IMG/VR virus record: IMGVR_UViG_3300017963_000190
Coordinates: 1 to 64,000 of that record
DNA: 64,000 bases
Reading direction: 5' to 3' (one strand)
Part shown: piece by piece, positions 19,572 to 49,934 of the stretch
Numbering within the stretch: the stretch's first letter is position 1
Layout: each line of letters begins with the position of its first letter
The notes under the pieces: generated by a model
Told to the model about the DNA's origin: nothing
What the model saw: only the letters and a program-made list of their open reading frames with translations
The model's database searches: none
Position numbers and translations under genes: made by a program

Positions 19572-20039
19572 ATTACACAACGAGTGAAGCACGACACAGG
19601 GAGTGAACCGTGTCAGTAACGTGTAGTGTACACTTACAGTGACCCCACACGCACACACGTATTACCTTGCAGGTCGCATGCCAACTAGGATCCCCTCGGA
19701 GGCTTCGTGTGCTGGCATGTGTGCGTGTCTATTCTTACACGCTTCACAGTTACCTCGGCTCCGGCCGGGCAGCTACGCCGGAGCCTGCGAGCTAGCAGCC
19801 ATGTGTCACGAACGGACACGGTGTGCGACAAGTAGATCTTGATATTCCTCATGCCCTCATGATACTGATGTGGAGTTACGTGTCAAATTCCGTGCACGTT
19901 CACATAAATTGCAATTAAATTCATTTCGGCTATTGACTCCGGAGCAATGATGGTAACGCGTGAGGGTTTAACCGTGTGCACGCAACGCGGAACGGATCCC
20001 CAATCATTAGGGATCCGTTCGCTGGGGATCGTGGCGGGA

Positions 20040-20339
20040 TTACTTGCGGATCAATTTGGGTGCTTGCACGTTGGTGAACCAACAATCGGGATCGTCGGGG
20101 TTGATCATGTGGCCGAAGTAACCATGGCCCCAGTAGGAATCATCCGCTTCCTGGGCCGTCATGAAAACGGTTTCGTCCGCGGCCTCGCACAGCGCGTCCA
20201 CACCCAGGCCACCGGCCTTCAAGAGCTCACGCACGCGACGCTTGTTGTGCGTGCGGCGTGCCTTGCGGCGCATGTAGCGCTGGTTGCCGTTGGTGTCGCT
20301 GTGACCGAGGCAGGGAGTCTTGCGGTACGAGCGGGCCAT
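20040..20339 (-). CDS. small basic protein
   Basis: start MARSYRKTP behind CCGGAGG. Confidence 0.8.
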   Translation of the reverse strand: MARSYRKTPCLGHSDTNGNQRYMRRKARRTHNKRRVRELLKAGGLGVDALCEAADETVFMTAQEADDSYWGHGYFGHMINPDDPDCWFTNVQAPKLIRK

Positions 20340-20560
20340 TTTATCCTCCGGGGGCGGGGTGGTTAGTATCTCCGCCCGTAGATATAAGGTAAGCATCATT
20401 GATACGTTGTCAATATGTGTGCACGAAAAAGAAAAAGAAATTAAATGCGCTTTGCCTATTGCCTTTTCGGGAAAGATGGTAACGCGTGAGGGTTTAACCC
20501 TGTGCACGTGCACGAAAAAGCCCCGAGCGTTTCCACCCGGGGCTTGCAGGAATCTCGGGG

Positions 20561-20845
20561 CTAGAAGGGGATGCCGTCCCACTTGTCCTTTTCGTACGCG
20601 TCTACGTGCGCGTCATACTCCGTGGTCTCGTAATAATACTTGGTGGCGACGTGAGCATCCTGTTCCAGCCACGCCTCTGAGAAGGCATCCACGGCGGCCT
20701 CGTAAGCCAGGGCATGCGGGCAGTCGAGGTCGTTATGGCGGAAGACGCTAGGGAACCACGCGTTATCTTCATAACACGTGCACGCGTTGTTAAGCGCGTC
20801 TAACTCAGCATCCAGCTTGGCGTTGGCGATTGCATAAGCCGTCAT
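20561..20845 (-). CDS. hypothetical protein
   Basis: CCGGAGGTAA RBS, own promoter and terminator. Confidence 0.8.
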   Translation of the reverse strand: MTAYAIANAKLDAELDALNNACTCYEDNAWFPSVFRHNDLDCPHALAYEAAVDAFSEAWLEQDAHVATKYYYETTEYDAHVDAYEKDKWDGIPF

Positions 20846-21022
20846 CTTGTTACCTCCGGTGGTTTGTGGTATCGTGGCCATGACTAGAACATAAGTCGCC
20901 TTGTTACGATGTCAAGCGCTTCGCAGAAACAAAGAAAAATAATTTTGTGGGTTGACCACAGCGATTTAATGGTAACGCGTGAGGGTTTAACCCTGCCCCT
21001 TAGGGGCGCTTGGCCCCCGGGC

Positions 21023-21217
21023 TTACTCGCCGATATCCAGCATGCCCATGATCATGGCTTGCTCGGCGCCGAGCACGTTGCTACCGCCGCACGAAGGGCA
21101 ATCGTACCCTTCCGCGTCGGGCTCCGTTCCATCGCGCGTGAACTCCGCGCAGTCGGGACAGAAGCCCACATAGTTATAGGTTGCTTCGCGATACTCGATT
21201 TCACTTACTTGCGTCAT
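21023..21217 (-). CDS. small Zn-ribbon protein
   Basis: GFCPDC..EPDAEGYDCPSCG. Confidence 0.8.
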   Translation of the reverse strand: MTQVSEIEYREATYNYVGFCPDCAEFTRDGTEPDAEGYDCPSCGGSNVLGAEQAMIMGMLDIGE

Positions 21218-21227
21218 GGCTTTCCTC

Positions 21228-21668
21228 CTAAAGGGCACCAAGGGTTGCCAGGGATACGTAGTTGCCTCCCTGGGCTGTGATGATATGGTCTAGCACGGGA
21301 ACCCCGAGGAGATCCCCGCATTGCTTCAGACGCGCAGTGAGCTCGATATCATCCCTGCTAGGGGCCGTGTCCCCACTGGGATGGTTGTGCGCGAGGATAA
21401 CGGCGGCGGCCCCAGCGATGACCGCCCCACGGAATACTTCGCGGGGATGTATCTCGACACTGCCCAGCGAGCCCATAGCCACCGTTTGAACGGCCAGGCA
21501 TTGGTGCTTGGTATTGAGATACATCACAACGAAAGTCTCTTGAGCCCGGCTGTGAAGGCCGTAGGCGTCAAGTATTTCGTTGGCGTGCTCTGCCGTACTG
21601 ATCTTGCGCTGGGCATCAATCCTGCGCCCAGTGTAGGTCACTTCCGCTTCTCTTAGAATCATGCCCAT
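21228..21668 (-). CDS. radC: RadC-like JAB domain protein
   Basis: E..V.YLNTK, HPREVF, AHNHPSGD..PS..D, VLDHII. Confidence 0.92.
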   Translation of the reverse strand: MGMILREAEVTYTGRRIDAQRKISTAEHANEILDAYGLHSRAQETFVVMYLNTKHQCLAVQTVAMGSLGSVEIHPREVFRGAVIAGAAAVILAHNHPSGDTAPSRDDIELTARLKQCGDLLGVPVLDHIITAQGGNYVSLATLGAL

Positions 21669-21847
21669 GGTCTTACCTCCGGTAGCATCTAAGATAAGCA
21701 CTATTGACAGCGTAACAAGGGCAAAAGAAAATAAAACTATTTACACTTTGGGGGTTGCGCAAAGTGAAAAGATGGTAACGCGTGAGGGTTTAACCCTGCC
21801 CAGCTACGGAAACGGCGGATCCCCGTTTGGAGATCCGCCTGATGGAT

Positions 21848-23227
21848 CTAGTCCATCAGCCAATCGGTGCCGGCCATCTCAGCCATGATCCCAAAGACGT
21901 CTTCCCACATGGTCTCCTCAGCCGACCGGTGGGAAAGGGATCCATCGCGCCCCTTGTCGTGGGCCAACTCGTGGATCATGGTCCCGAGCAACCGTTGCAG
22001 CTTGCCCGTCACCTGGCGATTGATCCGGATCTCTTTGCTCCCGTGAGAGTAGGTCCCGAGGGGGGCGTCGGGTGCCGTGAATCCGAAACACCGAATCCCA
22101 TCCAGGCGATCCCTATCGGCGACGTCGGCCAGATCCAGGAGATTGATCGCCTTGTTCCAGTTGACGCGTTCCTGGGGATCCAGGTCGGCGACGGCCACGT
22201 AGTCTCCGCTGGAATCGATCGCCTTGTTTAGGATCTCCTCGATCGTCCCGAATTTGTTGGCCAGGACCTTGCCCATGCCGTCGGGAACCACGATACCCTG
22301 CAGACCGTAGAAGGACACCTTGGTGGCTTCGTCTTCGTTGGCCACCGGCACAGCCTTGTCACCGTAGGTATCGGCGAAGGTTGCGGAGATCTGCTCACCC
22401 ACTTCCTTATTAGAGTAGCGGCAGCAACCGGCCAGACGCTTCACGTCGGGCATGTCGGATTCGAGCATACCCCAGACATTGGAGATCCAGTCTTCGTCTT
22501 CGTTGTGCGCGCAAAGGGACGTCCAGAGTTGGGCCGCGGCATAGCCGAGATCATAGTCGTCGACCATGCGGCGATCCCGATCCAGATCCAACCCACTGGC
22601 GAAATCGTAGCCCACCGCCAGCTCGGGTTTGGTGCAGACGTAGATCCCTTTGCAGTAGATGCGCCCCTTCATGTTCTGGCCAAACAGGATGGATCCCGAG
22701 TAGCCAACGCGCTGGATCTCGTGATCGGGGATCTCGATGCACCGCAGGAAACGATCCTTGTAGTCGTTCCACTGCCGTTTGGAGATCTTGATCCGCACAG
22801 TGAAATCGGACGTCGGGCGATCCCCGTAGTAATCCTGGCGACGCTTGCGCACCTTGACAGCCAGGACATCCACGCCAGCGTAATTCTTGGACGCTTCAAT
22901 GGCCGGTGTCCAGATCTCATCCCCATTCAGGAATTTGACTTCGATCCCCTGGCGCAGTAGGGCCAGCACACCCACCTTGAGACCATCGCCATGCTGGCCA
23001 CGCAAGGCGTCGTTGTCGCGCTTGGTTGACTTCCCGAGCAACCACACAGACGTGTCCAGGACACAGTCTCTGTTGGTCACTTCAAGCCATCCGTTGTCGT
23101 GGTTGTAATACGCGGGGTAGCCTTCGTCATGGCTATCCAGGGCATTTTGCATGACTTCCCGCAGTCCTTCCCATACGCTCCAATCGGGGGCGTATTCTGC
23201 GGTGATACTGAGCTCGAAACGTGCCAT
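21848..23227 (-). CDS. GHKL/HATPase-like ATPase with C-terminal HExxH metallopeptidase-like motif
   Basis: LREVMQNALD, GQHGDGLKVG; IHELAH; start moved to MARFEL because the ORF-track start runs through the promoter. Confidence 0.75.
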   Translation of the reverse strand: MARFELSITAEYAPDWSVWEGLREVMQNALDSHDEGYPAYYNHDNGWLEVTNRDCVLDTSVWLLGKSTKRDNDALRGQHGDGLKVGVLALLRQGIEVKFLNGDEIWTPAIEASKNYAGVDVLAVKVRKRRQDYYGDRPTSDFTVRIKISKRQWNDYKDRFLRCIEIPDHEIQRVGYSGSILFGQNMKGRIYCKGIYVCTKPELAVGYDFASGLDLDRDRRMVDDYDLGYAAAQLWTSLCAHNEDEDWISNVWGMLESDMPDVKRLAGCCRYSNKEVGEQISATFADTYGDKAVPVANEDEATKVSFYGLQGIVVPDGMGKVLANKFGTIEEILNKAIDSSGDYVAVADLDPQERVNWNKAINLLDLADVADRDRLDGIRCFGFTAPDAPLGTYSHGSKEIRINRQVTGKLQRLLGTMIHELAHDKGRDGSLSHRSAEETMWEDVFGIMAEMAGTDWLMD

Positions 23228-23451
23228 GTTTTGTCTCCGGTTTGTTGGTTCTCGGTCCGTGCAAATAAGATAAGCACTATTGACAGCGACACAAGGACCA
23301 CTTTGCATTTTCTCAATCTTTTTTCGGCACGGAGTTTGCAACGCGCGCACCTTATATACTGGCAGGGTTAAACCCTCACGCGTTACCATCATATTGACGA
23401 TGTCAAGTATTACAGGCAAGAAAAGCGATTTTTCTTTTTTCGCACAAAAGC

Positions 23452-23479
23452 TTGACTCTGAAACAAGGCTGCTTATATT
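23452..23479 (+). promoter_or_regulatory. plus-strand promoter of the inverted cassette
   Basis: TTGACT-N16-TATATT; RBS CCGGAGGTAA at 23511-23520. Confidence 0.75.
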
Positions 23480-23525
23480 CTATGTACGGCGCCGCAAGTT
23501 AGGGGCCGCACCGGAGGTAAAAGTG

Positions 23526-23561
23526 ATGCGAGATTGGATGTGGACCTGGCTAGGTCGGTAA
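23526..23561 (+). CDS. 11-aa Trp-rich mini-ORF MRDWMWTWLGR
   Basis: consensus phage promoter and RBS directly upstream. Confidence 0.5.
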   Translation: MRDWMWTWLGR

Positions 23562-23858
23562 ACTGGCTCACGGTGTTTACGCTAGGGCAGCGGCCACCGT
23601 GCTACTTAACCGGCAGCGTAGGGATCCAACGCGTAAAGGGATCCCGCGGTACCAGCGCTGAGACCGGCAACGTCAAAGCCCCCAACCTATTAACGCCAGG
23701 ACGCTAGCCACCTGGAGCATTCCGCTCCCGTTTCCCTTTAGGGGTGTAGGTTAAACCCTCACGCGTTACCACGAAAATTACGTTGTCAAGTATTACAGGC
23801 AAAAATAAAGGGCGCCCTTTCAGACGCCCTCAAATGCCCCGTGTTAGGAGCAAGGGTG

Positions 23859-24218
23859 CTAGGCACCCATGAGCCGTTCATAGTAAGCCTCGCGCTCCCA
23901 GGCCGCTTGCTCCCGCTCCTGGGCCACGATTTGATCGTGCAGCTTGGGGTCCTGGTTTTTCAGCGCGGACCAGTCGATACAGTGGACCTTGCCCGTGCCC
24001 TTGCAATGGGGACACGCGCGATCATAGCGACCGGCCATGTAGTCCTCCTGGAAATCGGGATCTTCCTGGGCCCACTCGCTAGCGGTCCAGGAGCCCATGT
24101 GCGCGGACGTGCGCCCGTCCCCTTCGCAGTCGTCACAGATGCGCCACTTACCAGGCAGCGTCACCTCGTAGCTGTCCCCGTCTTCGTCATAGACCGTGTA
24201 TTCGATATCCTTGGGCAT
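23859..24218 (-). CDS. DnaJ-type Zn-finger (CxxCxGxG) protein
   Basis: CDDCEGDG, CPHCKGTG. Confidence 0.75.
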   Translation of the reverse strand: MPKDIEYTVYDEDGDSYEVTLPGKWRICDDCEGDGRTSAHMGSWTASEWAQEDPDFQEDYMAGRYDRACPHCKGTGKVHCIDWSALKNQDPKLHDQIVAQEREQAAWEREAYYERLMGA

Positions 24219-24375
24219 GGTTTTTCTCCGGTGGTTGGGTTGTAGCCAGAATATAATCACTATTGACAGCGAAACAAGGGCAAAAGAAAAATAATTTTGT
24301 GGGTTGACTTCCGAGCTGGAATGGTAACGCGTGAGGGTTTAACCCTGGGAGAAGGCGGGCGCGTGCCCGCGTCTG

Positions 24376-24624
24376 CTATAGAACGCTCCACCTCCCTTTT
24401 TCGTAGAATTCGATCTCCGTGCACCCGAGCCCAGGCATCCCATAATCGTCCAAGGGCTCGAATTCCGTTTCGGGAGTGCAGACACCGGAGACGTAAACTG
24501 CGCCGTCGTCATCGCGCATACGGAAGCGCAGCGGGGCCGTGAGCCCTTCGCGCCAATTGCGGGATGCTACTCCCACACTATCCAGCGCACAGGCCATGTG
24601 CGCTTTGGTGATCTTCCAAGCCAT
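24376..24624 (-). CDS. hypothetical protein
   Basis: FRMRDDDG.VY..G..PLDDYG; GGAGGTAA RBS. Confidence 0.8.
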   Translation of the reverse strand: MAWKITKAHMACALDSVGVASRNWREGLTAPLRFRMRDDDGAVYVSGVCTPETEFEPLDDYGMPGLGCTEIEFYEKGRWSVL

Positions 24625-24636
24625 GGCATTACCTCC

Positions 24637-24921
24637 CTAGCAAAGGTCCTGGTTTAGTGCGATGCGCACGTCGCGCGCCACCTTCCGCTTCAAACGGGTA
24701 GCCGACAGGTTGTCTGCCACCCATCCCCACTCACGCACCGTATTCGCAGCCGCGTCCACCCACGCCTTGTGAGCAGGGATGCAACCGGTGGCAATGAAGA
24801 TCTCCGCCGCGGGTCGGCAGACAGCGCAAAGCTGCGCCCCTGACACGTTAAACCGCGTACGGGCGATCTCCGCCCACTGCCGCCACTCGGAACGTGCTTT
24901 GGTGATCTCGGTCGTGGTCAT
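24637..24921 (-). CDS. hypothetical protein
   Basis: CCGGAG RBS, structured leader. Confidence 0.75.
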   Translation of the reverse strand: MTTTEITKARSEWRQWAEIARTRFNVSGAQLCAVCRPAAEIFIATGCIPAHKAWVDAAANTVREWGWVADNLSATRLKRKVARDVRIALNQDLC

Positions 24922-25143
24922 GGTACTATCTCCGGTTTGATTTTGGGCGCACCTATCCCCCCAAAGGGGCTAAGGTGCGAGCCGGGAGTATTTCTCCCGC
25001 CGTAGGTAAAATATAAGTCGCCTTGTTACGAAGTCAATATAAAAAGAAAAATAATTTTGTGGGTTGCCTTTTCTCGAATCGTGGTAACGCGTGAGGGTTT
25101 AACCTATGCTCGTAGGGGATCCGAGTTGGATCCCATCTTTGGT

Positions 25144-25314
25144 TCACAGATAGAAGCGATACTCGATTGTGGGTTGGAACGATGCCCCTTTGTGGCGCAC
25201 CCTGCGTCCGTAGGAGCATTCCACTCGGCGGACTAGATCAGCGAGATCCGCATCACTGTAGAAAACCTCGCGCATCTTCCCTTGCACGAATACTCTGATC
25301 CTAATCTTGCACAT
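25144..25314 (-). CDS. small hypothetical protein (not in ORF track)
   Basis: 56 aa MCKIRIRV..; AGGAG RBS. Confidence 0.6.
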   Translation of the reverse strand: MCKIRIRVFVQGKMREVFYSDADLADLVRRVECSYGRRVRHKGASFQPTIEYRFYL

Positions 25315-25322
25315 TGGATCTC

Positions 25323-25562: not shown

Positions 25563-25709
25563 GCGTATAAGATAAGTCGCGTTGATACAATGTCAATAGA
25601 TGTAAGAAAAATAATTTTGTCTGTTGACTTTCCCGCAGCCGTTGCTACGCGTGAGGGTTTAACCGTACCTGGTAGGACGCACGCCCCCGGTTTCCCAGGG
25701 GCTACGCTG

Positions 25710-26366: not shown

Positions 26367-26551
26367 TTTCTTACCTCCGGTTGGTTGCCCGTAAAAGATA
26401 AGTCGCCTTGTTACGATGTCAAGCATTTTTCTTGCGGGCATCGCACGCGCGCCACCGCACAGCCCATGGTTAAACCTTCGCGCGTTACCACGAAAGCCCC
26501 CGCGTCAAGGGGATCCGTGGCGTTTTTCTGTTTTTATTTCGGATCCCCTTT

Positions 26552-26855: not shown

Positions 26856-26862
26856 GACGGAT

Positions 26863-27405: not shown

Positions 27406-27627
27406 AGTGTGCCTCCGATGCATAGAATATAAGTCGCTTTGATACGGAGTCAATAGGGCAGTGTCAATTTTTACGCGGAAGAAAAATCGAGAAAACACAT
27501 TCGGCGGGGTTGACTTCCGCGCAGGGATGGTAACGCGTGAGGGTTAAACCCTGTCTGAAAATAAAAAGCGGACCGGTGGTTACCTCCAAGGCCACCGGTC
27601 CGAGTTATGTTGCATTGCCCGCGGTAA

Positions 27628-27945: not shown

Positions 27946-28175
27946 GGCTTTTCCTCCGGTTAGTAGCGGGGTGGTTTGTCTCCCGCTGTGAAACAAATAT
28001 AAGTCGCCCTGTTACGAAGTCAATATTTTCTCGCAAAATAATTTATTTTTCTTTTTCGCGCTTGCGGGGTTGACTTTCGCGCGGGAATGGTAACGCGTGA
28101 CGGTTTAACCCAGGGGACAAAAGGGCAAATGGGGGCACCGCGTAGGCGCTCCCATTTGCGTTGTGCTGGCCGTTT

Positions 28176-28466: not shown

Positions 28467-28751
28467 TGGCTTTTCCTCCGGTTGCTGGTTTCTGTCCGCT
28501 GCTAGATAAAACATAAGTCGCCTTGTTACGAAGTCAATAGAACAGTGTCGATTTTTACGAACAAAAATAAATCACTTTTCTTGCGCAAAGGGGTTGACCG
28601 CGGCGAAAAGATGGTAACGCGTGAGGGTTAAACCCTAGGGGCGAGGAGAGGAGATCCCCCCGCGGATCCTAATCCTGTTAACTGGGGATCCGAAAGGGGA
28701 TCAAGAGGGGATCTGGCTAGGGATCTGCTTTTGTATAGAGACCTTTTCCTC

Positions 28752-29318: not shown

Positions 29319-29653
29319 TGCTTTACCTCCGGGTTAGTGCGGGGTGGTTAGCTTCGCTGGGTTTCTCCCGCCGCAAACAAAACATAAGCACTATTGACAG
29401 CGAAACAAGGCGAAAAAGAAAAATAATTAAATGCGCTTTAGGGGTTGACCGCGGCGAAAAGATGGTAACGCGTGAGGGTTTAACCCTTGACGTCCCGCGG
29501 GGCGAGGGGGCGCGGCCGGATCCCCTGGGCCTAATCCTGGTAATCGGGTAGGGTTAACGGATCCCCTTTGGTGTTAGTCCTAGTATCTCATTTTGTATAG
29601 AGGGTGGATCCCCAATGGGGATCCAGGCAGGTTTTGTATAGAGGCCCTTTGGC

Positions 29654-30735: not shown

Positions 30736-30900
30736 TTGCTTGTCTCCGGTTGGTTAGGGTTTCTTGCTTCGTGTGTAAAAGATAAGTCGCTTTGTTACGA
30801 TGTCAATATAGACAAGCGCAAAAAGAAAAACAAATAAAACGCACGCAGGAGGTTGACCGAGCTCGAAAGATGGTAACGCGTGAGGGTTAAACCTAGGTAG

Positions 30901-31453: not shown

Positions 31454-31633
31454 CTGGCTACCTCCGGTTTAGCGGGGTTGGTTTAGTTTCTCCCGCTGTG
31501 AAAACAAATATAAGCACGCTTGATACGGTGTCAATATGGACAAGCGAAAAAGAAAAAAGAAATAAAGCGCACGATGCCCCTTGCCAAATTCGTTTTCGTG
31601 GTAACGCGTGAAGGTTAAACCCTACCCGCAGAC

Positions 31634-31979: not shown

Positions 31980-32165
31980 TGTCTTACCTCCGGCGGGGCT
32001 GGTTGGTTTATTTTCTCCCGCGTTAGATACAAGATAAACACTATTGACAACGTAACAAGGGGCAAAAGGAAGAAAATCGAAAATAGTTTTTACGAAAAAG
32101 TGACCTGTAAGACTTGACGCGATGGATTTAATGGTAACGCGTGAGGGTTTAACCCTTTATGGGGT

Positions 32166-34817: not shown

Positions 34818-35004
34818 TCTTACCTCCGGTTGCGGCGATTAGTTTCTCCCGCCGTGCAAATAGTTTAAGCACTATTGACAGCGAGTCAAGGCGGCTTAGC
34901 AAGAAAATCGAAAAAGAATCGAAAGAAAATACGTAAAAATAGACGCCAGGGGTTGACGGGGACGAAAAGATGGTAACACGTGGGGTTAAACCCTTCAGGA
35001 CCAG

Positions 35005-37088: not shown

Positions 37089-37271
37089 GGCTCTTACCTC
37101 CGGTTAGCGGGGGTTGGTTTCTCCCGCCGTGCAACTAACATAAGCACTATTGACAGCGTAACAAGGGGCGCAACGAAAATAAATAAAAATAGTTTAGGGG
37201 TTGACGGCCCGCGGATCGTGGTAACGCGTGACGGTTTAACCGTGGCCGGAGCGGGGCCGTAGCCCCAGGGC

Positions 37272-38504: not shown

Positions 38505-38675
38505 TGGCTTTACCTCCGGTTGGCGTTGGTTTCTTCCGCCGTGCAAATAAGATAAGTCGCTTTGATACGGTGTCAAGTCTTACGCGCAGAAAATAAAAAC
38601 AAATAAAAGCACGGTGGCCCCTTGACCGAGCTCGGATCGTGGTAACGCGTGAGGGTTTAACCCATGGTGCGGAAG

Positions 38676-39739: not shown

Positions 39740-40019
39740 GGCTTTACCTCCGGTTGGCGGGGGGTTGGTTAGTTTTTCTCCCGCCGTGTGAAAAAGATAA
39801 GCACGCTTGACAGCGACACAAGGCCAATTGAGCAAAAAAGTGAAAATAGTTTTTCGGCGCCTATCATTTTCGATTTATTTTCGCTTTGTGGGTTGACCGC
39901 GGCGAAAAGATGGTAACGCGTGAGGGTTAAACCCTACCCCGCGAGGGGCGCTCAGGGCTCCCGAGGGGTCACCCTGAGCGTTAGTCCTCTAATATTCTAT
40001 ATTAGAGTGCGCCGCAGTG

Positions 40020-40286: not shown

Positions 40287-41177
40287 TTAGGCTGCTAACT
40301 CAGTTGCCAGCTCCGCTTCTGTTGTGGCTACCTCCCGCAGGTCCCGCACCCCGAAAAATTCCTTGGCCTTTTTGCGCACGGTAGCGTCTACGTATTGGAC
40401 CGCTTGTCGACTGCAGCCGGTGAGATCTGCTACCTCTTGAAGGGTGAGGGGATCATCGGAAAGTACCCGTAGGTCTAACACGATCCGTTGCTTTGGGGAA
40501 AGGGTCTGGGCGAACTCGTTGAACATCTGGCGCAGCTCTGATTTCCATTCCACGCGGCGGTAGACTTGCTCAGGGGTGGGGATGTTGCCTTGTAGAGTAT
40601 CGCCAAAGGTGACTCTATGCTCTCGCCTGGAGTAGGATGCGGTAGATACCTCATTTTTACCGCGCAATCGAACAAGCATAGCCTTGACGGTGGGGATGTC
40701 TACGTCAAGCGCTTTGGCTAAGCGCTCCGGGGTTGCTTCGATACCCTGGGCTTCTAGGGCAGCTTGCGTCTTAGACAGACCCCACAGACATTTACGCTGG
40801 CCTCCCGTGGTACCCGTGCGCACAATAAACAGGTTATCTCGAAAGGCTTCGAGCACGCGAGCCCTAACCCACTGCATAGCGTATGTGGTAAACCGCGTGC
40901 CCTTGTCTGTGTCGAATCTGTCGATGGATTCCATGAGGCCCACGTTGCCCGCTTGGATCAGGTCTAGCAGGGTTTCCTTGCAGCCGTTGCTATACCGCTT
41001 GGCTACCTTCACGACCAGGCGTAGGTTGTGCTCCGCGAGCCGTTGCCTAGCGCGTTGGTTGCCGTCGGTGGCCCGCTCTAGCAGCGCCCTTTCATCCTCG
41101 GCGGATAGCAAGGGGAATTTGCCCGCGGCTTGCATGTAAAAATTGAGAGTATCGAGATCGGTTGAAGTATTGGCCAT
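40287..41177 (-). CDS. RNA polymerase sigma factor, sigma-70 family (RpoH/sigma32-like)
   Basis: PLLSAEDE, HNLRLVVKVA, DLIQAGNVGL, RFTTYA.QW, RpoH-box-like IVRTGTTGGQRK, TLQEVA region 4. Confidence 0.92.
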   Translation of the reverse strand: MANTSTDLDTLNFYMQAAGKFPLLSAEDERALLERATDGNQRARQRLAEHNLRLVVKVAKRYSNGCKETLLDLIQAGNVGLMESIDRFDTDKGTRFTTYAMQWVRARVLEAFRDNLFIVRTGTTGGQRKCLWGLSKTQAALEAQGIEATPERLAKALDVDIPTVKAMLVRLRGKNEVSTASYSRREHRVTFGDTLQGNIPTPEQVYRRVEWKSELRQMFNEFAQTLSPKQRIVLDLRVLSDDPLTLQEVADLTGCSRQAVQYVDATVRKKAKEFFGVRDLREVATTEAELATELAA

Positions 41178-41565
41178 TTTTACCTCCGGTTGTTAGCGCG
41201 CTTTTCTTGCCCGCTCGATATAGGTTAATCACGCCTTGCTACGGAGTCAATAGAAAAAACACAACCGAGTGTCGATTTTTTCGCAGGCGGGCGCCGGACG
41301 GCAGGGTTAAACCGTCACGCGTTACCATTCCCCTTTACGTTGTCAAGGTAGCAAAGCGAAAAAATCGGATTATACTGGGGTCGGAAGGTTTCACGGGCTG
41401 GAAAAACGATCGGTCTAGTAGGAGATCTGCGCGCGGCGGGGGCCGCCCGCCACTTTTGCTCTAAGAACGTCTGGAAGGGGAGCTGCTGTAAGGGTTTTGA
41501 GCTCAGGCCAGATTTTGTATAGAGAGGGGATTGCGTATTTTGTATAGAGGGGAGGGGCTGAAATT

Positions 41566-42728: not shown

Positions 42729-42731
42729 TAG

Positions 42732-43367: not shown

Positions 43368-43436
43368 GATATACTGTCTCCGTAGTGATCAGAGGCAGTA
43401 TAATCGGTGGGATTTACGCTGTCAAGGTTGCCGTGA

Positions 43437-44130: not shown

Positions 44131-44134
44131 GGCG

Positions 44135-44560: not shown

Positions 44561-44609
44561 TGGCTTTACCTCCGTTGTTGGTGACAGTGTAACCAGGAAG
44601 CAGAGCGTG

Positions 44610-45059
44610 TCAAGTTTTACGTCGTACTTTTGCGGTTGCTACTCGAAGAGTGCTGCCGCGTTGCTCTTTTCTGCAGGGGCACCGCTCACTTTGTAGGATC
44701 CGCTCCAGCTTTCCCTGCATCGTCCAGTTGCTGAGCCATGACCTGAGGATTCCTAGGGAAACCTTCTTGTCCTGTTCTTGCACTTTAGGCAAAATCTCTG
44801 CAGCTCTAGCGCCTGGATTTTCAGCGATGAACTGCAGAGCCTTGTTCTTGGTGCGGTTTGAGTAACGTCTCCTCTTCTTTTTCTTCGCCTTTTCGTTCTC
44901 TGGAGAGCTGCTTTGCTTAGGTACAGGCAATCGCGCCTTTCTGCTCTTCTCTCCCTTCAGCATGTCGACATCTCTTCTGAGGGATGTCAGGATTTTTGTG
45001 AGGCGCTTGATCTCGCTCTCTAGGATCTGTACTCCAGGACTGGGGTGATGGGTTGACAT
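44610..45059 (-). CDS. basic protein, possible winged HTH
   Basis: ALQFIAENPG.RAAEI. Confidence 0.7.
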   Translation of the reverse strand: MSTHHPSPGVQILESEIKRLTKILTSLRRDVDMLKGEKSRKARLPVPKQSSSPENEKAKKKKRRRYSNRTKNKALQFIAENPGARAAEILPKVQEQDKKVSLGILRSWLSNWTMQGKLERILQSERCPCRKEQRGSTLRVATAKVRRKT

Positions 45060-45075
45060 GTTTGCTTCCTTTTTA

Positions 45076-45312
45076 CTACGCCTTTTCTGGTAGTCTATCT
45101 TCGTTGTCCTCGATGAATTCGCGGATCGTGTCCGCCATTGCCAGGAGCTTGCGCCACTGGCTCTTGTAGAGCGTTACGGGGTAGCGTTGGATTCCGTAGA
45201 CGGACACGCCGCCCTTGGCGCTTACTCGCAGGGTGGTACCTTGCTTCTGAAACTCTGCTAGCAGGGCTCGGGTTGCTTCCAATTCTCTTCGCAGTTGATC
45301 TTCGTTGGCCAT
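45076..45312 (-). CDS. conserved hypothetical protein
   Basis: VSAKGGVSVYG..RYPVTLY..QW. Confidence 0.8.
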   Translation of the reverse strand: MANEDQLRRELEATRALLAEFQKQGTTLRVSAKGGVSVYGIQRYPVTLYKSQWRKLLAMADTIREFIEDNEDRLPEKA

Positions 45313-45446
45313 GGTGTACCTCCGTTCTTGTTACGTGCACAGCGTAATCAGAGGTATTGACTGCGTCAAGTTTATCGCTTATTAAAATGGGGCGCAGCCG
45401 CTTATCTCTCGTAGGGACACGTGGTCTTTGGCAGCTGCGCCCCCGG

Positions 45447-45842
45447 CTAATTCGATTCGTCCAATGAAATCCCCAACGCGTGGGCTGCTGATTCCGCGTC
45501 GCATACTACGGACGATTGCATAATACCCCATTCTTTGACTTTTGGTAGCCACTCGACGACTTGCGCGTCTGTGAGCCCCACTGTTTCACCCATGCCATCG
45601 TTGGCCGCGATGAACATATTGCCGAAGATAGGCTGCGAGTAGCCGTAGTCTGTCGTTACCTGTCGGTTAGGCTCGCATGCGTAGAAGCCCTCGTCGTTGG
45701 CCCACAGGTCCACGCCGGGTACAAGGTGCAGGCAGGTAATAAGCCCTCCAACGATCTCTTGCATGGCGTCGAGGGTGTTTTCCATTTCTTCAACGCAAGG
45801 CGGCTCACCCATGCGCAGGGTGATAATCTTGATCTTAGCCAT
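45447..45842 (-). CDS. DUF3846-like protein
   Basis: LDAMQEIVGGLI..NDEG..PNR..I.G. Confidence 0.75.
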   Translation of the reverse strand: MAKIKIITLRMGEPPCVEEMENTLDAMQEIVGGLITCLHLVPGVDLWANDEGFYACEPNRQVTTDYGYSQPIFGNMFIAANDGMGETVGLTDAQVVEWLPKVKEWGIMQSSVVCDAESAAHALGISLDESN

Positions 45843-46041
45843 CGGCTTCCTCTTCAACAGAGTTAAGGAACGCTACAGCTTCCACCAATCCCATCCCGGT
45901 AGTTCTTCTGATGTACAGAATCACCGCAGGTTTGTTGCGCGTCGACAGCTGCCGCAGCAAAGGAAGCTCCAGGTCCATGCCGTCGTTGTAGGCCATTTCC
46001 AGAAAACTTCCGACGATGGTTTTCTTCTCGTAATCGCTCAT
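45835..46041 (-). CDS. small protein with ribosomal bL12-CTD-like motif
   Basis: NKPAVILYIRRTTGMGLVEA. Confidence 0.6.
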   Translation of the reverse strand: MSDYEKKTIVGSFLEMAYNDGMDLELPLLRQLSTRNKPAVILYIRRTTGMGLVEAVAFLNSVEEEADG

Positions 46042-46156
46042 GGTAGCTAAACCATCCTTGAAATAGGAAGGAGCAGCCCAGTCACTGGTTTGGATACTGG
46101 GTTTTCTCGGTGAGATAACCGGGCTGCTCCTTCGATAGGAATTAACTAGCGGTTTG

Positions 46157-46414
46157 TCACTTCGCTCGTGGGTAGACCACGTAGCCCATACCAAGAGTTT
46201 CCCACTGGCAGGGTACCTTGGTACAGCCCAGAGCGTCCTGCACGTCGTCGACGGACACAGCCGGGCCTTCCCAGAACCATCGACCCTTATAGTGCATCAA
46301 TTCTCCAGCACAGGAATCCTGCATATCGCGGACGAACCGCTGGTGGTCTGGGTGCGTGTAGTCTTCTGGGCGTACACCACGAGCTTCGTCATCATCAAAA
46401 GCGTTGTCCGTCAT
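46157..46414 (-). CDS. hypothetical protein
   Basis: HYKGRWFWEGPAV..GMGYVVYP. Confidence 0.8.
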   Translation of the reverse strand: MTDNAFDDDEARGVRPEDYTHPDHQRFVRDMQDSCAGELMHYKGRWFWEGPAVSVDDVQDALGCTKVPCQWETLGMGYVVYPRAK

Positions 46415-46440
46415 CTTGTTACCTCCATTTAGCCGAGAGC

Positions 46441-46662
46441 TTATTGGAGCTCGATCGTCCCATTCGCGATCATCGTGGCCGTCTCCACCATTTGAGCGAA
46501 CACCCTGGCCAGCTCTGGTGTCATATCCGCAGTGGCCGAAGCATTTACGTAGCGCTTTCCCATTGATGCTTTGTGTACTGTAACCCGGATATTCGAGTTA
46601 AGGTTTTCCAGGGACAAGACTGCTACCTCGTCGATGAGATTTGATTTCTTGATCGTAAACAT
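46441..46662 (-). CDS. hypothetical protein
   Basis: consensus RBS and promoter. Confidence 0.75.
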   Translation of the reverse strand: MFTIKKSNLIDEVAVLSLENLNSNIRVTVHKASMGKRYVNASATADMTPELARVFAQMVETATMIANGTIELQ

Positions 46663-46722
46663 GGCTCTTACCTCCGTTCGTTGATGGTATCAGTATAAGC
46701 GGCATTGTTACGCTGTCAAGTC

Positions 46723-47199
46723 TTACACGCGTTCCAGGAGCGCCTCGATTTCCCGCTGGTTGATGGGGATAGAGTTGAGCAAGCAAAAGGTGTTTTCGTA
46801 ATAGGCAGACCAGAATGCACCGTGCCGGGTAATGGTGAGCTTGGGCATGTCAACCTTCACGCTGTGTTCCATCGCTTCCAAGAGGCTCTTGTGCAGCTCT
46901 GGCTGCTCTTCCATATTCACCAGGGCAGACTCCTCTTCCATCCATTCGGTGAGGAATTCACCATTGCCATCTACGTTGGTTGGATCGATCCACACTGCAT
47001 TGCTGTCGGTGAACTCGATCGCCTCTACAGAGCGATCGTAACCAACAGCCGTGTGGAATACGAGGAGCTTATCCAGCAACCGGTTCACTAACTGACCGGT
47101 GCATGGTAGCACGCATGCGAGCGGCACGTTTGGGCTTTCTTCGTCAAAGCCTGAGCCTAGCTCCATCGCGTACAACACCAAATATTTATTGTGGGTCAT
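46723..47199 (-). CDS. hypothetical protein (paralogue of 32297-32944)
   Basis: shared motifs. Confidence 0.8.
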   Translation of the reverse strand: MTHNKYLVLYAMELGSGFDEESPNVPLACVLPCTGQLVNRLLDKLLVFHTAVGYDRSVEAIEFTDSNAVWIDPTNVDGNGEFLTEWMEEESALVNMEEQPELHKSLLEAMEHSVKVDMPKLTITRHGAFWSAYYENTFCLLNSIPINQREIEALLERV

Positions 47200-47319
47200 T
47201 ACGTTACCTCCATGTACATGCCCAGTTTAATCAGCTATGCTACGTAGTCAAGTTGGATGGAAATAAAAATGGGGCCACGCAGCAGAACGTGACCCCCAGG
47301 AGGAAAGCGATGCCAGTAA

Positions 47320-47727
47320 CTACTCAGCGTCGCGCGGATAGTCTTGTGGGTTGAGGCCGATGCCTTTGATGGACTGGAGCAGCAGATCGTAGTTGTGCTC
47401 GATGCGGCTCCCGAAGCGCCGGACGAACGATCCCAACGGCTCCATGTGCGTCTCTGCCTCGCTCATAACGGCGGCGACATAGACGGTGGCAGTGCATGAT
47501 GGCATCATATACATGCCGCCATCGTTTTTGCAGCAGTCGATTTCGCATTGGTCTACCCCAGAACCGAATTTGTAGTGCACCGCCTCGTTGTCCACCACCA
47601 GAATACCGTCGGGGCCTTCCAAGATGGCCCAGCTGGCGTCGGTTCCATAGGCGGTGAGGTTGCGATCATCGCAGTTGTCTTCGATGAACTTGGCCACGTT
47701 GTAGACTTTGACCTGTTTCATTGGCAT
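47320..47727 (-). CDS. hypothetical protein
   Basis: start MPMKQ behind AACGGAGGTAA. Confidence 0.75.
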   Translation of the reverse strand: MPMKQVKVYNVAKFIEDNCDDRNLTAYGTDASWAILEGPDGILVVDNEAVHYKFGSGVDQCEIDCCKNDGGMYMMPSCTATVYVAAVMSEAETHMEPLGSFVRRFGSRIEHNYDLLLQSIKGIGLNPQDYPRDAE

Positions 47728-47796
47728 TTTTGTTACCTCCGTTCGTTGTTGCACCTAGTATAATCGGCTTTGTTGCACTGTCAAGCCTTTACTAGG

Positions 47797-48408
47797 CTAG
47801 TAGTACCGGCATACCGGGCGCTTCCATACGCATCCAGCAACGGTATCTCGGAAGAGCTTTTTTAGGTTGGCCTTGACGAACCCCTCCTTGAGGGAATACT
47901 TGTTTCCATCGTAATCCTCTGCGAGGTAATAAAATTGGCCATTAGTGTCCTGCATCTGCTTGAGAACGCGGAGGTTTATACAACCGTTCACGTCAAATAC
48001 AGCTAGATCGCCTGGCCACAGCATGAAGAGAGAAGGCAGCGGCCCCGCATCCTGGCATGCCTTGCCGAAATCCTCCGAGAAGTAATCCTGGAGATTATCC
48101 TGAATGCACTTTTTGAGCTGGGCCTCCGATTCTCTGTAAACAGGCTGCAGCTTCGGGTGCTCAAAGCACACGACCGCCCTTTCACAGTCGTTTTCGTACC
48201 AGAGACGGCCACTGTAATGCTGCCCAATGTACTGAGCTTGCAACGAAAGATTCTGCTCCGCCCACTTGTAGGTTACCGCGAGACCTCCATCGCCGTCCTC
48301 GGTATCGTACTGGACCACCCCCGGGAAAATATGGACCGCGTAGTCGGCCCTTCCCCATGGGGTTTGTGTTCCTTTCTTAGGCTCGAAGCTTTTCACCTTC
48401 ACGTTCAT
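47797..48408 (-). CDS. conserved MGE protein (TPWG..WYExDC motif)
   Basis: motifs; consensus RBS. Confidence 0.8.
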   Translation of the reverse strand: MNVKVKSFEPKKGTQTPWGRADYAVHIFPGVVQYDTEDGDGGLAVTYKWAEQNLSLQAQYIGQHYSGRLWYENDCERAVVCFEHPKLQPVYRESEAQLKKCIQDNLQDYFSEDFGKACQDAGPLPSLFMLWPGDLAVFDVNGCINLRVLKQMQDTNGQFYYLAEDYDGNKYSLKEGFVKANLKKLFRDTVAGCVWKRPVCRYY

Positions 48409-48461
48409 GGCTGTTACCTCCGTTCGTTTTTGTTCTTACATTATCAGTATAAGCAGCTTTG

Positions 48462-48668
48462 TTACGCTGTCAAGCCAAGCTCCTCAGGAGTCTTAGTTGG
48501 TTTTCTGCCGCTCCAGTGCGTTGTCTCTGTCCCACATTTTTTGTGCCGTTGCTGGACCCACTGCCTTTTCTCCTCGCAGTAGTAAGCCTCCCAGCACTGG
48601 CGCCGGGGTACCCAGCGCCTGCACTCAGGGCACCAGAAGTGATCGTCGTAGCCAACGTATGGTTCCAT
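48462..48668 (-). CDS. small Cys-rich protein
   Basis: GGAGG RBS. Confidence 0.65.
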   Translation of the reverse strand: MEPYVGYDDHFWCPECRRWVPRRQCWEAYYCEEKRQWVQQRHKKCGTETTHWSGRKPTKTPEELGLTA

Positions 48669-48669
48669 G

Positions 48670-49020
48670 CTAGCATCCTCCTGCGCACGTGCACACACGG
48701 CAGCCGTTTTCGTCGTAGCTCTCAGGCATGTGGACACTGACGCCCAGTTTCTTTTTCAGCAGTGCCAGAAGCGCGGCACCGTCGGCTTCATTGACGTGCA
48801 TCTTTTCCATGATGTATCCAATATCGACAGTTTGGTACGCACGAACGGCCATCACGGTGCCTCCGCTTCCGCCGTTGCGCATCCACGCGATCATGCTGCC
48901 GAAGTCGCAGTCGTCCTCAAAGCTCACCTTGTCAGAAAGGATGCAGCCGTACCGCGTCCCATTACCGGGCTCCCAGATGACAAAGCGCGTAGACTCTCCT
49001 TCAATAAATCGTGTAGGCAT
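48670..49020 (-). CDS. hypothetical protein
   Basis: EPGNGTRY motif. Confidence 0.75.
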   Translation of the reverse strand: MPTRFIEGESTRFVIWEPGNGTRYGCILSDKVSFEDDCDFGSMIAWMRNGGSGGTVMAVRAYQTVDIGYIMEKMHVNEADGAALLALLKKKLGVSVHMPESYDENGCRVCTCAGGC

Positions 49021-49032
49021 CCTCTTACCTCC

Positions 49033-49665
49033 TTAGAACTGGCCGCTGTCTTTCATGGCCTGGTCAAGCTGCTCTACGAGCTGGATAACTTGCTGCTCCA
49101 GTCGCAGCCATGGGGCAATCGTGCGCGTCTTGAACCGCTTGGGGCGATCGTAATAATCAGAAGAGGACCCCACGTAACCGCCGTCTAGTTTTTCAGCTGC
49201 AGCATGCACCCGCAACGACAACTGGCGCCGTTTAACTGCCAGCTCCCCACGTCCCATCATTGGGATATCCTTAACATGGGGAGCCTCTGGCTTTACATCG
49301 TCCCACACGAGCCGCGCTTGGACGATCTTACATTCGGTACCCGTGAATACGTAGCGCCACCGCTCCCCTTCCTCCCCAGCCATCTCGATGAAGGAGCCCG
49401 CTTCCACGAAAGGCCCTAGGGCCTTAAAAAAAGCGTCGTCATCTACAGATGCTTTTTCGCCAGCGAAACCGATGTCCTCGATGTTCCCCTCGGCGTCGGT
49501 GGAGTACACCTCCCATCCCATCTCGAACAAGATGTCATCGAAAGACGCGCGTTTGCTGGGGTTGCCTGTCTGCCACTCCATGTTGATGAGGGCCTGGCGC
49601 GCGGGCTCGATCTTCTCGGCTCTCATGAAAAAGCTAGTCGCGATGCAGTTGATTCCGTATCCCAT
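49033..49665 (-). CDS. hypothetical protein
   Basis: LGPFV..GSFIEM.GEEGERWR. Confidence 0.8.
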   Translation of the reverse strand: MGYGINCIATSFFMRAEKIEPARQALINMEWQTGNPSKRASFDDILFEMGWEVYSTDAEGNIEDIGFAGEKASVDDDAFFKALGPFVEAGSFIEMAGEEGERWRYVFTGTECKIVQARLVWDDVKPEAPHVKDIPMMGRGELAVKRRQLSLRVHAAAEKLDGGYVGSSSDYYDRPKRFKTRTIAPWLRLEQQVIQLVEQLDQAMKDSGQF

Positions 49666-49934
49666 GGCTTACCTCCGTTTGTTTCATCCGGCCACAGGAT
49701 AATCAGACGGGCAGCGTGCGTCAAGTTTGACAGGTGCCTCAGAGAAAATAAGACAAAATGCATTTTCGGGGTTGCGCTAGCCAGAATAATGGTAACGCGT
49801 GAGGGTTTAACCCTTTATGGGGAGGGTGTGGGGTGCCCTCGGCGAGGACGATTAAGATAATAAGTTTCTAAGAGCGACGATTTGTTGGCGCGTAGAGTTT
49901 GACAGGGAGCCAGGCGGGTTTTGTATAGAGGGGG

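What the first reader, a model, noticed from the sequence alone, without database searches (positions are those of the whole stretch)
19933..49812. Gene-cassette array delimited by 23 copies of a conserved element, TTGAC-N16-TAACGCGTGAGGGTTWAACC
Seen: the near-invariant 23-bp sequence occurs only between genes, 22 times in 19.95-41.3 kb and once at 49.8 kb. It contains two palindromes, ACGCGT and GGTT-W-AACC. A TTGAC/TTGCC/TTGCG hexamer sits 15 nt (once 16) before TAACGC in every copy checked, while the intervening bases vary. Typical minus-strand unit: gene(s), terminator, element, A/T tract, sigma70 promoter, CCGGAGGTAA RBS, next gene(s). The cargo is heterogeneous, includes paralogues and RNA-only units, and one unit is a mirror image. 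Inference, three options: (a) recombination/joining sites of a phage-specific cassette system for swapping host-takeover genes, integron-like in logic but not in sequence; (b) an operator fused to a divergent antisense promoter, possibly read by the phage sigma, that shuts off all early units together; (c) RNAP/protein loading sites used during DNA entry. I know of no described element with this sequence.
Basis: partly seen in the sequence, partly recalled or inferred. Interest (0 to 1): 0.92.

Follow-up and report, generated by a model that had tools for sequence, protein, structure and literature searches.

The report
Backward-facing promoter boxes between phage cassettes
An uncultured 260-kb phage separates about two dozen small early gene units with one near-identical sequence that is built like a bacterial promoter but points backwards into the preceding unit, and related phages show whole units gained, moved and flipped exactly at it.

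Summary
There are 23 copies (22 within 3 mismatches, one degenerate at 34953-34993), none expected by chance, and all lie between genes. The window is the first 64 kb of a 260-kb viral contig, and the motif was found nowhere else on that contig.

The element is larger than described: an A/T tract, then TTGAC, then exactly 16 nt, then ATGGTAACGCGTGAGGGTTWAACCCT. Six related uncultured phages carry the same design: 95 copies, spacing of 16 in all but one, 83% pointing against the genes.

The A/T tract and TTGAC keep a fixed distance to the box. Their distance to the neighbouring sigma70-type early promoter varies. So the element has the anatomy of a promoter of its own, whose -10/start block does not fit sigma70.

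The phage encodes an RpoH-like sigma inside the array. A gene-direction copy precedes the sigma operon in four genomes. Relatives with a different sigma lack the box.

Best reading (inferred, no transcript data): a phage-sigma promoter that fires convergently into early units. It also serves as the crossover point for cassette exchange; two box-to-box rearrangements are resolved. No recombinase was found.

The closest known kind is the T4-type PeSL. I rate this a new variant of that kind.

The parts
19933..19973 (+). Box copy 1 (TTGAC-N16-TAACGCGTGAGGGTTTAACC), pointing against gene 20040-20339
20459..20499 (+). Box copy 2 (TTGCC variant of the -35-like pentamer)
20952..20992 (+). Box copy 3
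21755..21795 (+). Box copy 4 (TTGCG), after the 459-aa ATPase-like gene
23366..23406 (-). Box copy 5, in gene direction, about 70 nt upstream of the early promoter of gene 21848-23227. The same orientation is found at the orthologous place in L033, L034, L037 and L039.
23386..23748 (+). Unit X, the 'mirror' cassette. It has a + strand promoter TTGACT-16-TATATT (23452-23479), a conserved noncoding core (23543-23737) and a + strand terminator.
23749..23789 (-). Box copy 6, reversed. It points into the 3' end of the inverted unit X. Its A/T tract is the T-run of the terminator of gene 23859.
24304..24344 (+). Box copy 7
25064..25104 (+). Box copy 8 (TTGCC)
25624..25664 (+). Box copy 9 (TTGCTACGCG variant, 2 mismatches)
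26468..26508 (-). Box copy 10, in gene direction and degenerate (ACGCGCGAAGG), upstream of gene 25710-26366. Orthologous degenerate gene-direction copies exist in L013 and L034.
27510..27550 (+). Box copy 11
28070..28110 (+). Box copy 12
28594..28634 (+). Box copy 13. L034 has one extra box-to-box cassette at this junction.
29445..29485 (+). Box copy 14. Its spacer is identical to those of copies 13 and 21.
30853..30893 (+). Box copy 15
31581..31621 (+). Box copy 16 (GAAGG, the variant that is standard in most relatives)
32114..32154 (+). Box copy 17
34953..34993 (+). Box copy 18, degenerate (TAACACGTG-GGGTTAAACC, one base shorter)
37201..37241 (+). Box copy 19
38622..38662 (+). Box copy 20
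39893..39933 (+). Box copy 21
40287..41177 (-). Phage sigma factor gene (296 aa), RpoH-like, candidate reader of the box
41305..41346 (-). Box copy 22, in gene direction (17-nt spacing), upstream of the sigma70-type promoter of the sigma gene. Orthologous gene-direction copies precede the sigma operon in L015, L033 and L040.
49772..49812 (+). Box copy 23, an outlier in the region of TATACT-type promoters
20888..20915 (-). Example of the gene-direction early promoter that accompanies each box (TTGACA-16-TATGTT). About 20 such promoters lie between 19.8 and 38.6 kb.

Best explanation
Each copy is a complete bacterial-type promoter about 75 bp long. It has a UP-like A/T tract, a -35-like TTGAC, a spacer of fixed length and free sequence, and an invariant block that would span the extended -10 (TGG), the -10 (TAACGC), the discriminator and the start site (about -15 to +2). 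A short palindrome, GGTTWAACC, follows at about +1 to +10.

In 19 of 23 copies this promoter points against the genes, into the 3' end of the preceding early unit. The early units themselves start from ordinary sigma70-type promoters (TTGACA-16-TATNTT).

The block does not fit sigma70, and the phage makes an RpoH-like sigma from inside the array. So the most likely mechanism is as follows. Host RNA polymerase first transcribes the units and the sigma gene. The phage sigma then redirects core polymerase to the boxes. Convergent and antisense transcription damps all early units together. The few gene-direction copies keep the sigma operon and two other genes running.

Separately, the box is the longest identical repeat at every unit boundary. 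It is therefore the point where units are excised, inserted, lost or flipped by recombination, as proposed for PeSLs of T4-type phages.

Shown: the anatomy, its conservation, the orientation bias, the box-bounded rearrangements, and co-occurrence with the sigma type.
Inferred: that the box is transcribed from, which sigma reads it, and the shut-off effect.
For: Promoter anatomy in the window.
- An A/T tract (-52 to -30) and TTGAC sit at a fixed distance from the box in all copies. This includes the four copies that have no divergent early promoter next to them.
- The distance to the early promoter varies from about 40 to 85 bp.

Conservation in relatives.
- 95 copies were found in 7 genomes. 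The TTG pentamer lies exactly 16 nt before TAACGC in all but one, with variable spacers.
- The part conserved across the family is TGGTAACGCGTGAAGG(T/C)T, which is about -15 to +2 if TAACGC is the -10.
- Downstream of that, the sequence varies by lineage: GGTTWAACC, GGCTWAGCC or GGCT-NNN-CC.

Not a sigma70 promoter.
- The consensus scan finds the gene-direction early promoters (26 against 6.4 expected) but never the box.

The sigma.
- Its best NCBIfam match is proteobacterial RpoH (E = 1e-46, below the cut-off). It carries an RpoH-box-like QRKCLWGLSK.
- From my own knowledge, sigma32 promoters combine CTTGAA with a short spacer.
- Orthologous sigmas (39-41% identity) are encoded in the box-bearing relatives L021, L033, L039 and L040.
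- Relatives L035 and L120 have an unrelated sigma and no box, and they show a different odd promoter motif.

Orientation.
- 79 copies point against the genes and 16 with them.
- The gene-direction copies sit at orthologous places: before the sigma operon (4 genomes), before the 459-aa gene (5 genomes) and before the 218-aa gene (3 genomes).

Recombination joint.
- Homology between unit X in the window and in L034 starts and stops at the two flanking boxes. The unit sits elsewhere and is inverted. This is the result expected if a one-box circle integrated into the gene-direction box ahead of gene 21848.
- L034 has one extra box-to-box cassette at the 28.6-kb junction.
- Unit order is scrambled in L033, L039 and L040.
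Against: - There are no transcript data, so no start site is known.
- TAACGC is not the sigma32 -10 (CCCCATNT). The link between this sigma and the box rests on co-occurrence in one clade, which shared ancestry alone could produce.
- The box, tested as exact TGGTAACGCGTGAG, TGGTAACGCGTGAAGG and TTGAC-N16-TAACGCGTG, is absent from the other 196 kb of the contig. If the sigma also drives middle or late genes, it must use other or much weaker sites there.
- In the clade with the other sigma, the odd promoter-like motif faces with the genes, not against them. The antisense logic is therefore not general in this group.
- The palindrome GGYTWARCC shows a compensated change in L040 and survives alone in L038. 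That hints at a separate binding site or hairpin, which this model explains only loosely (a 5' stem or an operator).
Confidence: 0.5

Rival explanations
1. The element is the same backward-facing promoter, but the host holoenzyme reads it from the start of infection, helped by the UP tract, the -35 and the TG motif. Polymerase sitting at the box or firing from it collides with read-through from the unit upstream. The box then acts as an insulator or terminator between units whose hairpins mostly lack T-runs.
For: The hairpins at unit ends are mostly not canonical terminators. The box has a good -35, a UP-like tract and TGn. Distant relatives (L120, L035) drive their units, the sigma gene included, from similarly odd TGGTAGTTG / CGTGACCC promoters, which suggests that some host enzyme may accept such sites.
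Against: TAACGC lacks the T at -7 that sigma70 needs, and the spacer is 15 bp counted from a hexamer. Invariance of CGCGTGAAGG is not needed for sigma70. Constant convergent firing would cut early expression from the start. This model gives no meaning to the gene-direction copies ahead of the sigma operon.
Confidence: 0.15
2. The box is the site of a dedicated site-specific recombinase, with the palindrome GGTTWAACC as the crossover core. The array would then be a true cassette system.
For: Rearrangements end at the boxes. The palindrome has a free central W and shows a compensated arm change in L040 (GGCTWAGCC in 7 of 7 copies). It also survives in L038, which lacks the rest of the box.
Against: None of the 45 window proteins of 140 aa or more matched an integrase, resolvase or transposase family. 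The arms are only 4-5 bp long. L039 has largely lost the palindrome but keeps the rest of the box. This model does not explain the fixed TTGAC and A/T tract. About 26 bp of identity is enough for phage homologous recombination, as argued for PeSLs (PMC4122927).
Confidence: 0.12
3. The box is only a protein-binding site, an operator or roadblock for a phage DNA-binding protein such as the HTH protein at 18232-18690, with no promoter activity.
For: It contains two short palindromes. It is near-invariant over 26 bp. One protein of the window matches HTH_17 and an excisionase/regulator PHROG.
Against: ACGCGT is replaced by ACGGGT in most L034 copies, so that palindrome is dispensable. The distance to the early promoter it would regulate is not fixed. 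The bipartite layout with a spacer of free sequence and an A/T tract is the signature of a promoter, not of an operator.
Confidence: 0.1
4. The functional strand is the gene strand. Either GGTTWAACCCTCACGCGTTACCA is a promoter for a phage-specific (T7/N4-type) polymerase placed ahead of each sigma70 promoter, or it is an RNA 3' element or processing site.
For: On this reading, 83% of copies point with the genes. The length of 23 bp is typical of single-subunit polymerase promoters. The window variant matches the T3 promoter at 10 of 13 positions from -17 to -5 (T3 sequence recalled from memory, so this is only a lead).
Against: The resemblance fades in the relatives (GGTTTAACCTTCAC, GGCTTAGCCTTTAC). 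There is no A/T-rich melting region before the would-be start. No RNA polymerase family matched among the window proteins. GTCAA and the A/T tract at fixed distance downstream would have no role. The conserved reversed copies ahead of the sigma operon would then fire away from it.
Confidence: 0.08

Closest known systems
PeSLs (promoter-early stem-loops) of T4-type phages (Arbiol et al. 2010, PMC2839356; Comeau et al. 2014, PMC4122927)
   Same: Small, mostly unknown early genes are each flanked by a conserved composite of stem-loop, A/T-rich stretch, sigma70-like promoter and Shine-Dalgarno sequence. These composites concentrate in variable regions. Indels, replacements and displacements between relatives sit at the repeats. 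Mini-circle excision and integration by recombination between repeats is the proposed mechanism. The flipped unit X here is the expected footprint of that process.
   Different: PeSLs have no second, invariant, backward-facing promoter-like box. Here the most conserved part is that box, not the gene-direction promoter. The phages are not shown to be T4-like. The box co-occurs with an RpoH-like phage sigma.
Back-to-back early/late promoter switches (phi29 A2c/A3; lambda PR/PRM); from my own knowledge
   Same: Divergent promoters share an upstream region. One is read by the unmodified host enzyme and the other needs a phage factor. The pair sets the timing.
   Different: Those are single loci controlled by DNA-binding regulators. 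Here the module is repeated 23 times, and the second promoter mostly reads antisense into another unit.
Phage sigma cascades (SPO1 gp28 and gp33/34); SPO1 host-takeover module; from my own knowledge, context in PMC13401047
   Same: Many short early operons with strong host-type promoters. A phage sigma made early redirects host core polymerase.
   Different: SPO1 middle promoters drive middle genes. No array of antisense promoters in the early module is described there.
Integron attC / gene cassette arrays
   Same: A tandem array of small heterogeneous units is separated by a repeated site. Units are gained, lost and reordered.
   Different: No integrase was found in the window. Every unit has its own promoter. 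There is no attC-type imperfect inverted repeat. The repeat looks like a promoter.
Sigma32 (RpoH) promoters, CTTGAA-N13-15-CCCCATNT; from my own knowledge
   Same: A (C)TTGA -35 element with a shorter spacer than sigma70 promoters. The phage sigma is most similar to RpoH.
   Different: The -10 region is TGGTAACGC instead of CCCCATNT.

Membership tests
PeSL-type regulatory cassette (T4-type phages) | Composite of stem-loop, A/T-rich stretch, sigma70-like promoter and SD immediately upstream of small ORFs | tested here: met
   a hairpin after each stop codon, then an A/T tract, TTGACA-16-TATNTT, CCGGAGGTAA and ATG
PeSL-type regulatory cassette (T4-type phages) | Repeats sit at indels, replacements and displacements between related genomes | tested here: met
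   unit X was moved and flipped with its ends at the boxes; L034 has a one-cassette indel; unit order is scrambled in L033, L039 and L040
PeSL-type regulatory cassette (T4-type phages) | Mini-circles formed by recombination between tandem repeats | not testable with these tools
   This needs PCR or long reads on phage DNA. Only the footprint is available.
PeSL-type regulatory cassette (T4-type phages) | Host genome is a T4-type myovirus | tested here: inconclusive
   No DNA match to any phage record. The two proteins searched found only remote relatives, under 31% identity. Structural genes lie outside the window.
Integron | Tyrosine recombinase (IntI) next to the array | tested here: not met
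   no integrase or recombinase family among the 45 window proteins of 140 aa or more. The rest of the contig was not seen.
Integron | attC sites: imperfect inverted repeats of 57-141 bp; mostly promoterless cassettes | tested here: not met
   the repeat is a bipartite promoter-like sequence with a 9-11-bp palindrome, and each unit has its own promoter
Sigma-70-family promoter (any sigma) | -35-like element at fixed distance from a conserved -10 region, spacer of free sequence, optional UP tract | tested here: met
   TTGAC lies 16 nt from TAACGC in 94 of 95 copies, the spacer varies, and an A/T tract lies 14-31 nt upstream of TTGAC
Sigma-70-family promoter (any sigma) | Transcription start 6-8 nt after the -10 | not testable with these tools
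   No transcript data for this uncultured phage
Housekeeping sigma70 promoter | -10 hexamer close to TATAAT with A at position 2 and T at position 6; 16-18-bp spacer | tested here: not met
   the scan never calls the box. TAACGC has C at position 6, and the spacer is 15 bp.
Single-subunit (T7/T3-type) polymerase promoter | Cognate polymerase gene in the genome; A/T-rich -4 to -1; start within the conserved 23-mer | tested here: inconclusive
   no RNA polymerase family in the window. The region before the would-be start is GCGT. 196 kb of the contig were not seen.

The most novel reading that the evidence does not exclude
A phage-encoded RpoH-like sigma factor has a regulon that is essentially an array of backward-facing promoters, one at the end of each early unit. 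A single protein would then silence the whole host-takeover programme by convergent transcription while feeding its own operon. The same 26-bp promoter core would double as the joint at which cassettes are exchanged between phages. That would be a regulatory element and a mobility element in one.
Probability: 0.3. Interest if true: 0.85.

Novelty: new variant of a known kind. Interest (0 to 1): 0.68.

Why it matters
How large phages switch off their early programme is known for only a few model phages. An array-wide antisense switch run by one phage sigma would be a new and simple solution. It can be tested with one purified protein and short DNA templates.

The same repeat also gives a concrete sequence-level handle on how blocks of unknown host-takeover genes are shuffled among uncultured jumbo phages. 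This extends the PeSL idea beyond T4-type phages. The box can serve as a search key to collect such cassettes from metagenomes.

Tried and rejected
- Near-identity DNA search of 19-42 kb against phage records: no match.
- tRNA scan and Rfam searches of the window: nothing.
- The sigma homologue found in IMG/VR (L005) is an unrelated high-GC contig with no array.
- Single-match contigs from the metagenome and IMG/VR pattern scans lack TTGAC and TGGT, or were left unexamined. I treated them all as chance matches.
- Exact scans for the core (three patterns) found no copy in the other 196 kb of the contig and no further IMG/VR relatives.
- Unit X is not unusually structured as RNA (z = +1.3).
- Sigma54, sigma28, ECF and SigB consensus sequences were compared by eye and rejected.
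- A coding role for the ATG inside the box was rejected: the ATG is not conserved in other copies or in relatives.
- Flank-by-flank BLAST of L034 boxes against window boxes was only partly informative, because the promoter side is itself a repeat family.
- The T3-promoter resemblance was rejected as a likely coincidence.
- I did not walk the rest of the contig, because there were too few look-ups to reach the late genes.

Full report
**1. What is there**

TAACGCGTGAGGGTTWAACC with up to 3 mismatches occurs 22 times in the window. One hundred dinucleotide-preserving shuffles gave no match. A 23rd, degenerate copy lies at 34971-34992.

The window is bases 1-64000 of a 260,067-bp viral contig, IMGVR_UViG_3300017963_000190. 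Four exact pattern scans found the motif nowhere else on that contig.

I built a gene map from codon usage and ribosome-binding sites. It puts every gene between 17 and 52 kb on the minus strand, and all 23 copies fall in intergenic gaps. The array region is richer in G+C (56-57%) than its flanks.

**2. Anatomy**

Read in gene direction, a typical boundary runs as follows:
- stop codon
- G+C-rich hairpin
- GGTTWAACCCTCACGCGTTACCAT
- 11-12 variable bases
- GTCAA
- an A/T tract
- a variable stretch
- TTGACA-16-TATNTT
- leader, CCGGAGGTAA, ATG

The gene-direction promoters are plain sigma70-type: 26 consensus matches against 6.4 expected. Only about a third of the hairpins have a T-run, and terminator-like sites are not enriched.

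Read on the other strand, the element has every feature of a bacterial promoter. It has an A-rich tract with good information content at -52 to -30 (counted from the T of TAACGC). TTGAC follows at -21 to -17, then a spacer of free sequence, then the invariant ATGGTAACGCGTGAGGGTTWAACCCT.

The A/T tract and TTGAC keep their distance to the box in every copy. That includes the four copies with no divergent early promoter beside them. The early promoter itself lies anywhere from about 40 to more than 85 bp away. So the tract and the pentamer belong to the box, not to the early promoter.

**3. Relatives**

A pattern scan of metagenome contigs found a second phage, in metagenome Ga0255046. It has 14 copies and the same unit anatomy, and its proteins are 40-65% identical to those of the window.

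The 459-aa marker protein (21848-23227) has about 80 homologues. Contigs around seven of them were fetched.

L033, L034, L037, L039 and L040 carry the box. Together with the window and Ga0255046, that makes 95 copies in 7 genomes. The TTG pentamer lies exactly 16 nt before TAACGC in all but one.

The part conserved across all of them is TGGTAACGCGTGAAGG(T/C)T. If TAACGC is the -10, this is the stretch from the extended -10 through the discriminator to the start site. Those are the positions where RNA polymerase holoenzymes make sequence-specific contacts (established knowledge).

Three lineage-specific variations are informative:
- L034 has ACGGGT instead of ACGCGT in most copies, so that palindrome is dispensable.
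- L040 has GGCTWAGCC in 7 of 7 copies, a compensated change in the second palindrome.
- L039 keeps at most the GGC/GCC stem.

L038 is a more distant relative. It has only the palindrome TAGGTTAAACCTA, 40-80 nt away from GTCAA plus an A/T tract.

**4. Orientation**

Across the seven genomes, 79 copies point against the genes and 16 point with them. The gene-direction copies are not random. They recur at orthologous places:
- Before the sigma operon: window 41305, L015, L033 and L040.
- Before the 459-aa gene: window 23366, L033, L034, L037 and L039.
- Before the 218-aa gene, as a degenerate GCGCG-type copy: window 26468, L013 and L034.

**5. Which polymerase**

The box is not a sigma70 promoter. 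The -10 is TAACGC, the spacer is 15 bp counted from a hexamer, and the scan never calls it.

The array encodes a sigma-70-family protein with regions 1.2, 2, 3 and 4. Its best family match is proteobacterial RpoH, below the curated cut-off. It contains an RpoH-box-like QRKCLWGLSK.

Orthologues at 39-41% identity are encoded in L021, L033, L039 and L040.

Relatives L035 and L120 form a second clade. Their sigma is unrelated to that of the window but conserved between the two at 40% identity. They have no box. Their units start instead from a different, equally invariant odd motif that faces with the genes: AAAATAATTCTGACA-N14-TGGTAGTTGC in L120 and TTCTGCG-N13-CGTGACCCTAC in L035.

So each clade pairs one sigma type with one non-canonical promoter-like motif. 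This is the main argument that the box is the cognate promoter of the RpoH-like sigma. The argument is confounded by shared ancestry, and it is an inference.

**6. Cassette exchange**

L034 is largely colinear with the window. It differs by unit-scale gains and losses and by one displaced unit. L033, L039 and L040 are scrambled.

Two events are resolved to the base.

*Unit X (window 23386-23748).* This is the mirror-image unit. It occurs in L034 at another place and in the standard orientation.
- The alignment is homologous from one flanking box to the other. It is about 95% identical over a 195-nt noncoding core. Homology stops just outside both boxes.
- The neighbouring unit of gene 23859 is homologous up to its terminator. 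After that, L034 has a standard box and the window has the reversed one.
- This is the outcome expected if a circle carrying one box plus X recombined into the gene-direction box that precedes the 459-aa gene. That explains why the unit is flipped and why both of its boxes are reversed.

*The 28.6-kb junction.* L034 has exactly one extra box-to-box period.

Several window copies also share identical spacers, which points to recent duplication or gene conversion.

No integrase, resolvase or transposase family matched among the 45 window proteins of 140 aa or more. Only an HTH_17/excisionase-like regulator turned up.

Some content differences also lie inside units, so the boxes are not the only breakpoints. 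One caveat applies to the short Ga0255046 contigs: a repeat like this can mislead assemblers.

**7. Comparison with known systems**

The unit design and its evolutionary behaviour match the PeSLs of T4-type phages: stem-loop, A/T stretch, sigma70-like promoter and SD, sitting at indels, with mini-circles proposed (PMC4122927; PMC2839356).

What is not described for PeSLs is a second, better conserved promoter-like box facing the other way, tied to a phage sigma.

Integron membership fails on the integrase, on attC structure and on promoterless cassettes.

The reverse complement of the window box resembles the T3 promoter at 10 of 13 positions (recalled from memory). The resemblance fades in the relatives, and nothing else supports a single-subunit polymerase.

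**8. Verdict**

The best-supported mechanism has two parts. The first is a backward-facing promoter, probably read by the phage sigma, that damps early units by convergent transcription. The second is its use as the crossover point for cassette exchange.

The promoter anatomy, the conservation, the orientation bias and the box-bounded rearrangements are shown. Transcription from the box, the identity of the sigma and the silencing effect are inferred.

Nothing in this work required a step to be referred.

Noticed in passing
window 23543-23737 (+), within unit X 23386-23748: A conserved noncoding core of about 195 nt has its own sigma70-type promoter (23452-23479) and a + strand terminator. It is about 95% identical to L034 (about 6190-6380), although neighbouring proteins are only 57-90% identical. 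There is no Rfam match, and the fold energy is not unusual (z = +1.3). It is probably a new phage small RNA.
   Followed up: partly
window 28729, 29591, 29632, 32261, 35099, 40041, 41513, 41538, 49919, 58357 (all -) and 19070 (+): CTCTATACAAAA occurs 11 times against 0.19 expected, mostly in gene direction and several within a few bases of a stop codon. It also occurs in Ga0255046, L035 and L038 and, as GCTATATACAAA, in L120. It is therefore conserved more widely than the box. Its function is unknown.
   Followed up: partly
window 19244-38439, plus 50634: GGGGATCC occurs 28 times against about 2 expected. All but one copy lie in the array region. Many of the unit-end hairpins are built from inverted copies of it.
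   Followed up: no
window 18691-20039: This 1.35-kb stretch has no gene, only a cluster of GGGGATCC repeats (19.2-19.7 kb). A similar GGGGATCC-rich noncoding stretch ends relative L016. It lies between the array and the HTH gene and could be an origin of replication or a protein-binding platform.
   Followed up: no
window 19859-38576 versus 42094-61929 (-): There are two classes of sigma70-like promoters. TTGACA-16-TATNTT, often with conserved spacers, goes with the boxes. TTGACA-16/17-TATACT is found in the box-free region from 42 to 62 kb.
   Followed up: partly
L035 and L120 (distant relatives): This clade has a different phage sigma (244-271 aa, weak ECF-like matches) and no box. Its units start from near-invariant gene-direction modules, AAAATAATTCTGACA-N14-TGGTAGTTGC or TTCTGCG-N13-CGTGACCCTAC. 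It may be a second sigma-promoter pair.
   Followed up: partly
L015 821-970: In the Ga0255046 relative, one unit carries tRNA-Asn and tRNA-His instead of a protein gene. The window itself has no tRNA.
   Followed up: yes
window, proteins of 140 aa or more (only RadC, DUF7227, sigma, AAA and ParB_N were assigned to genes): Pfam matches among the cargo and flanking proteins include BrxL-like ATPase, Mg-chelatase-like ATPase, RadC/JAB (21228-21668), a ribosomal L7/L12 C-terminal domain, GmrSD_N/ParB-like, DUF7227 (39008-39739), DUF5983 and DUF7007. Six paralogous pairs exist among the window proteins.
   Followed up: partly
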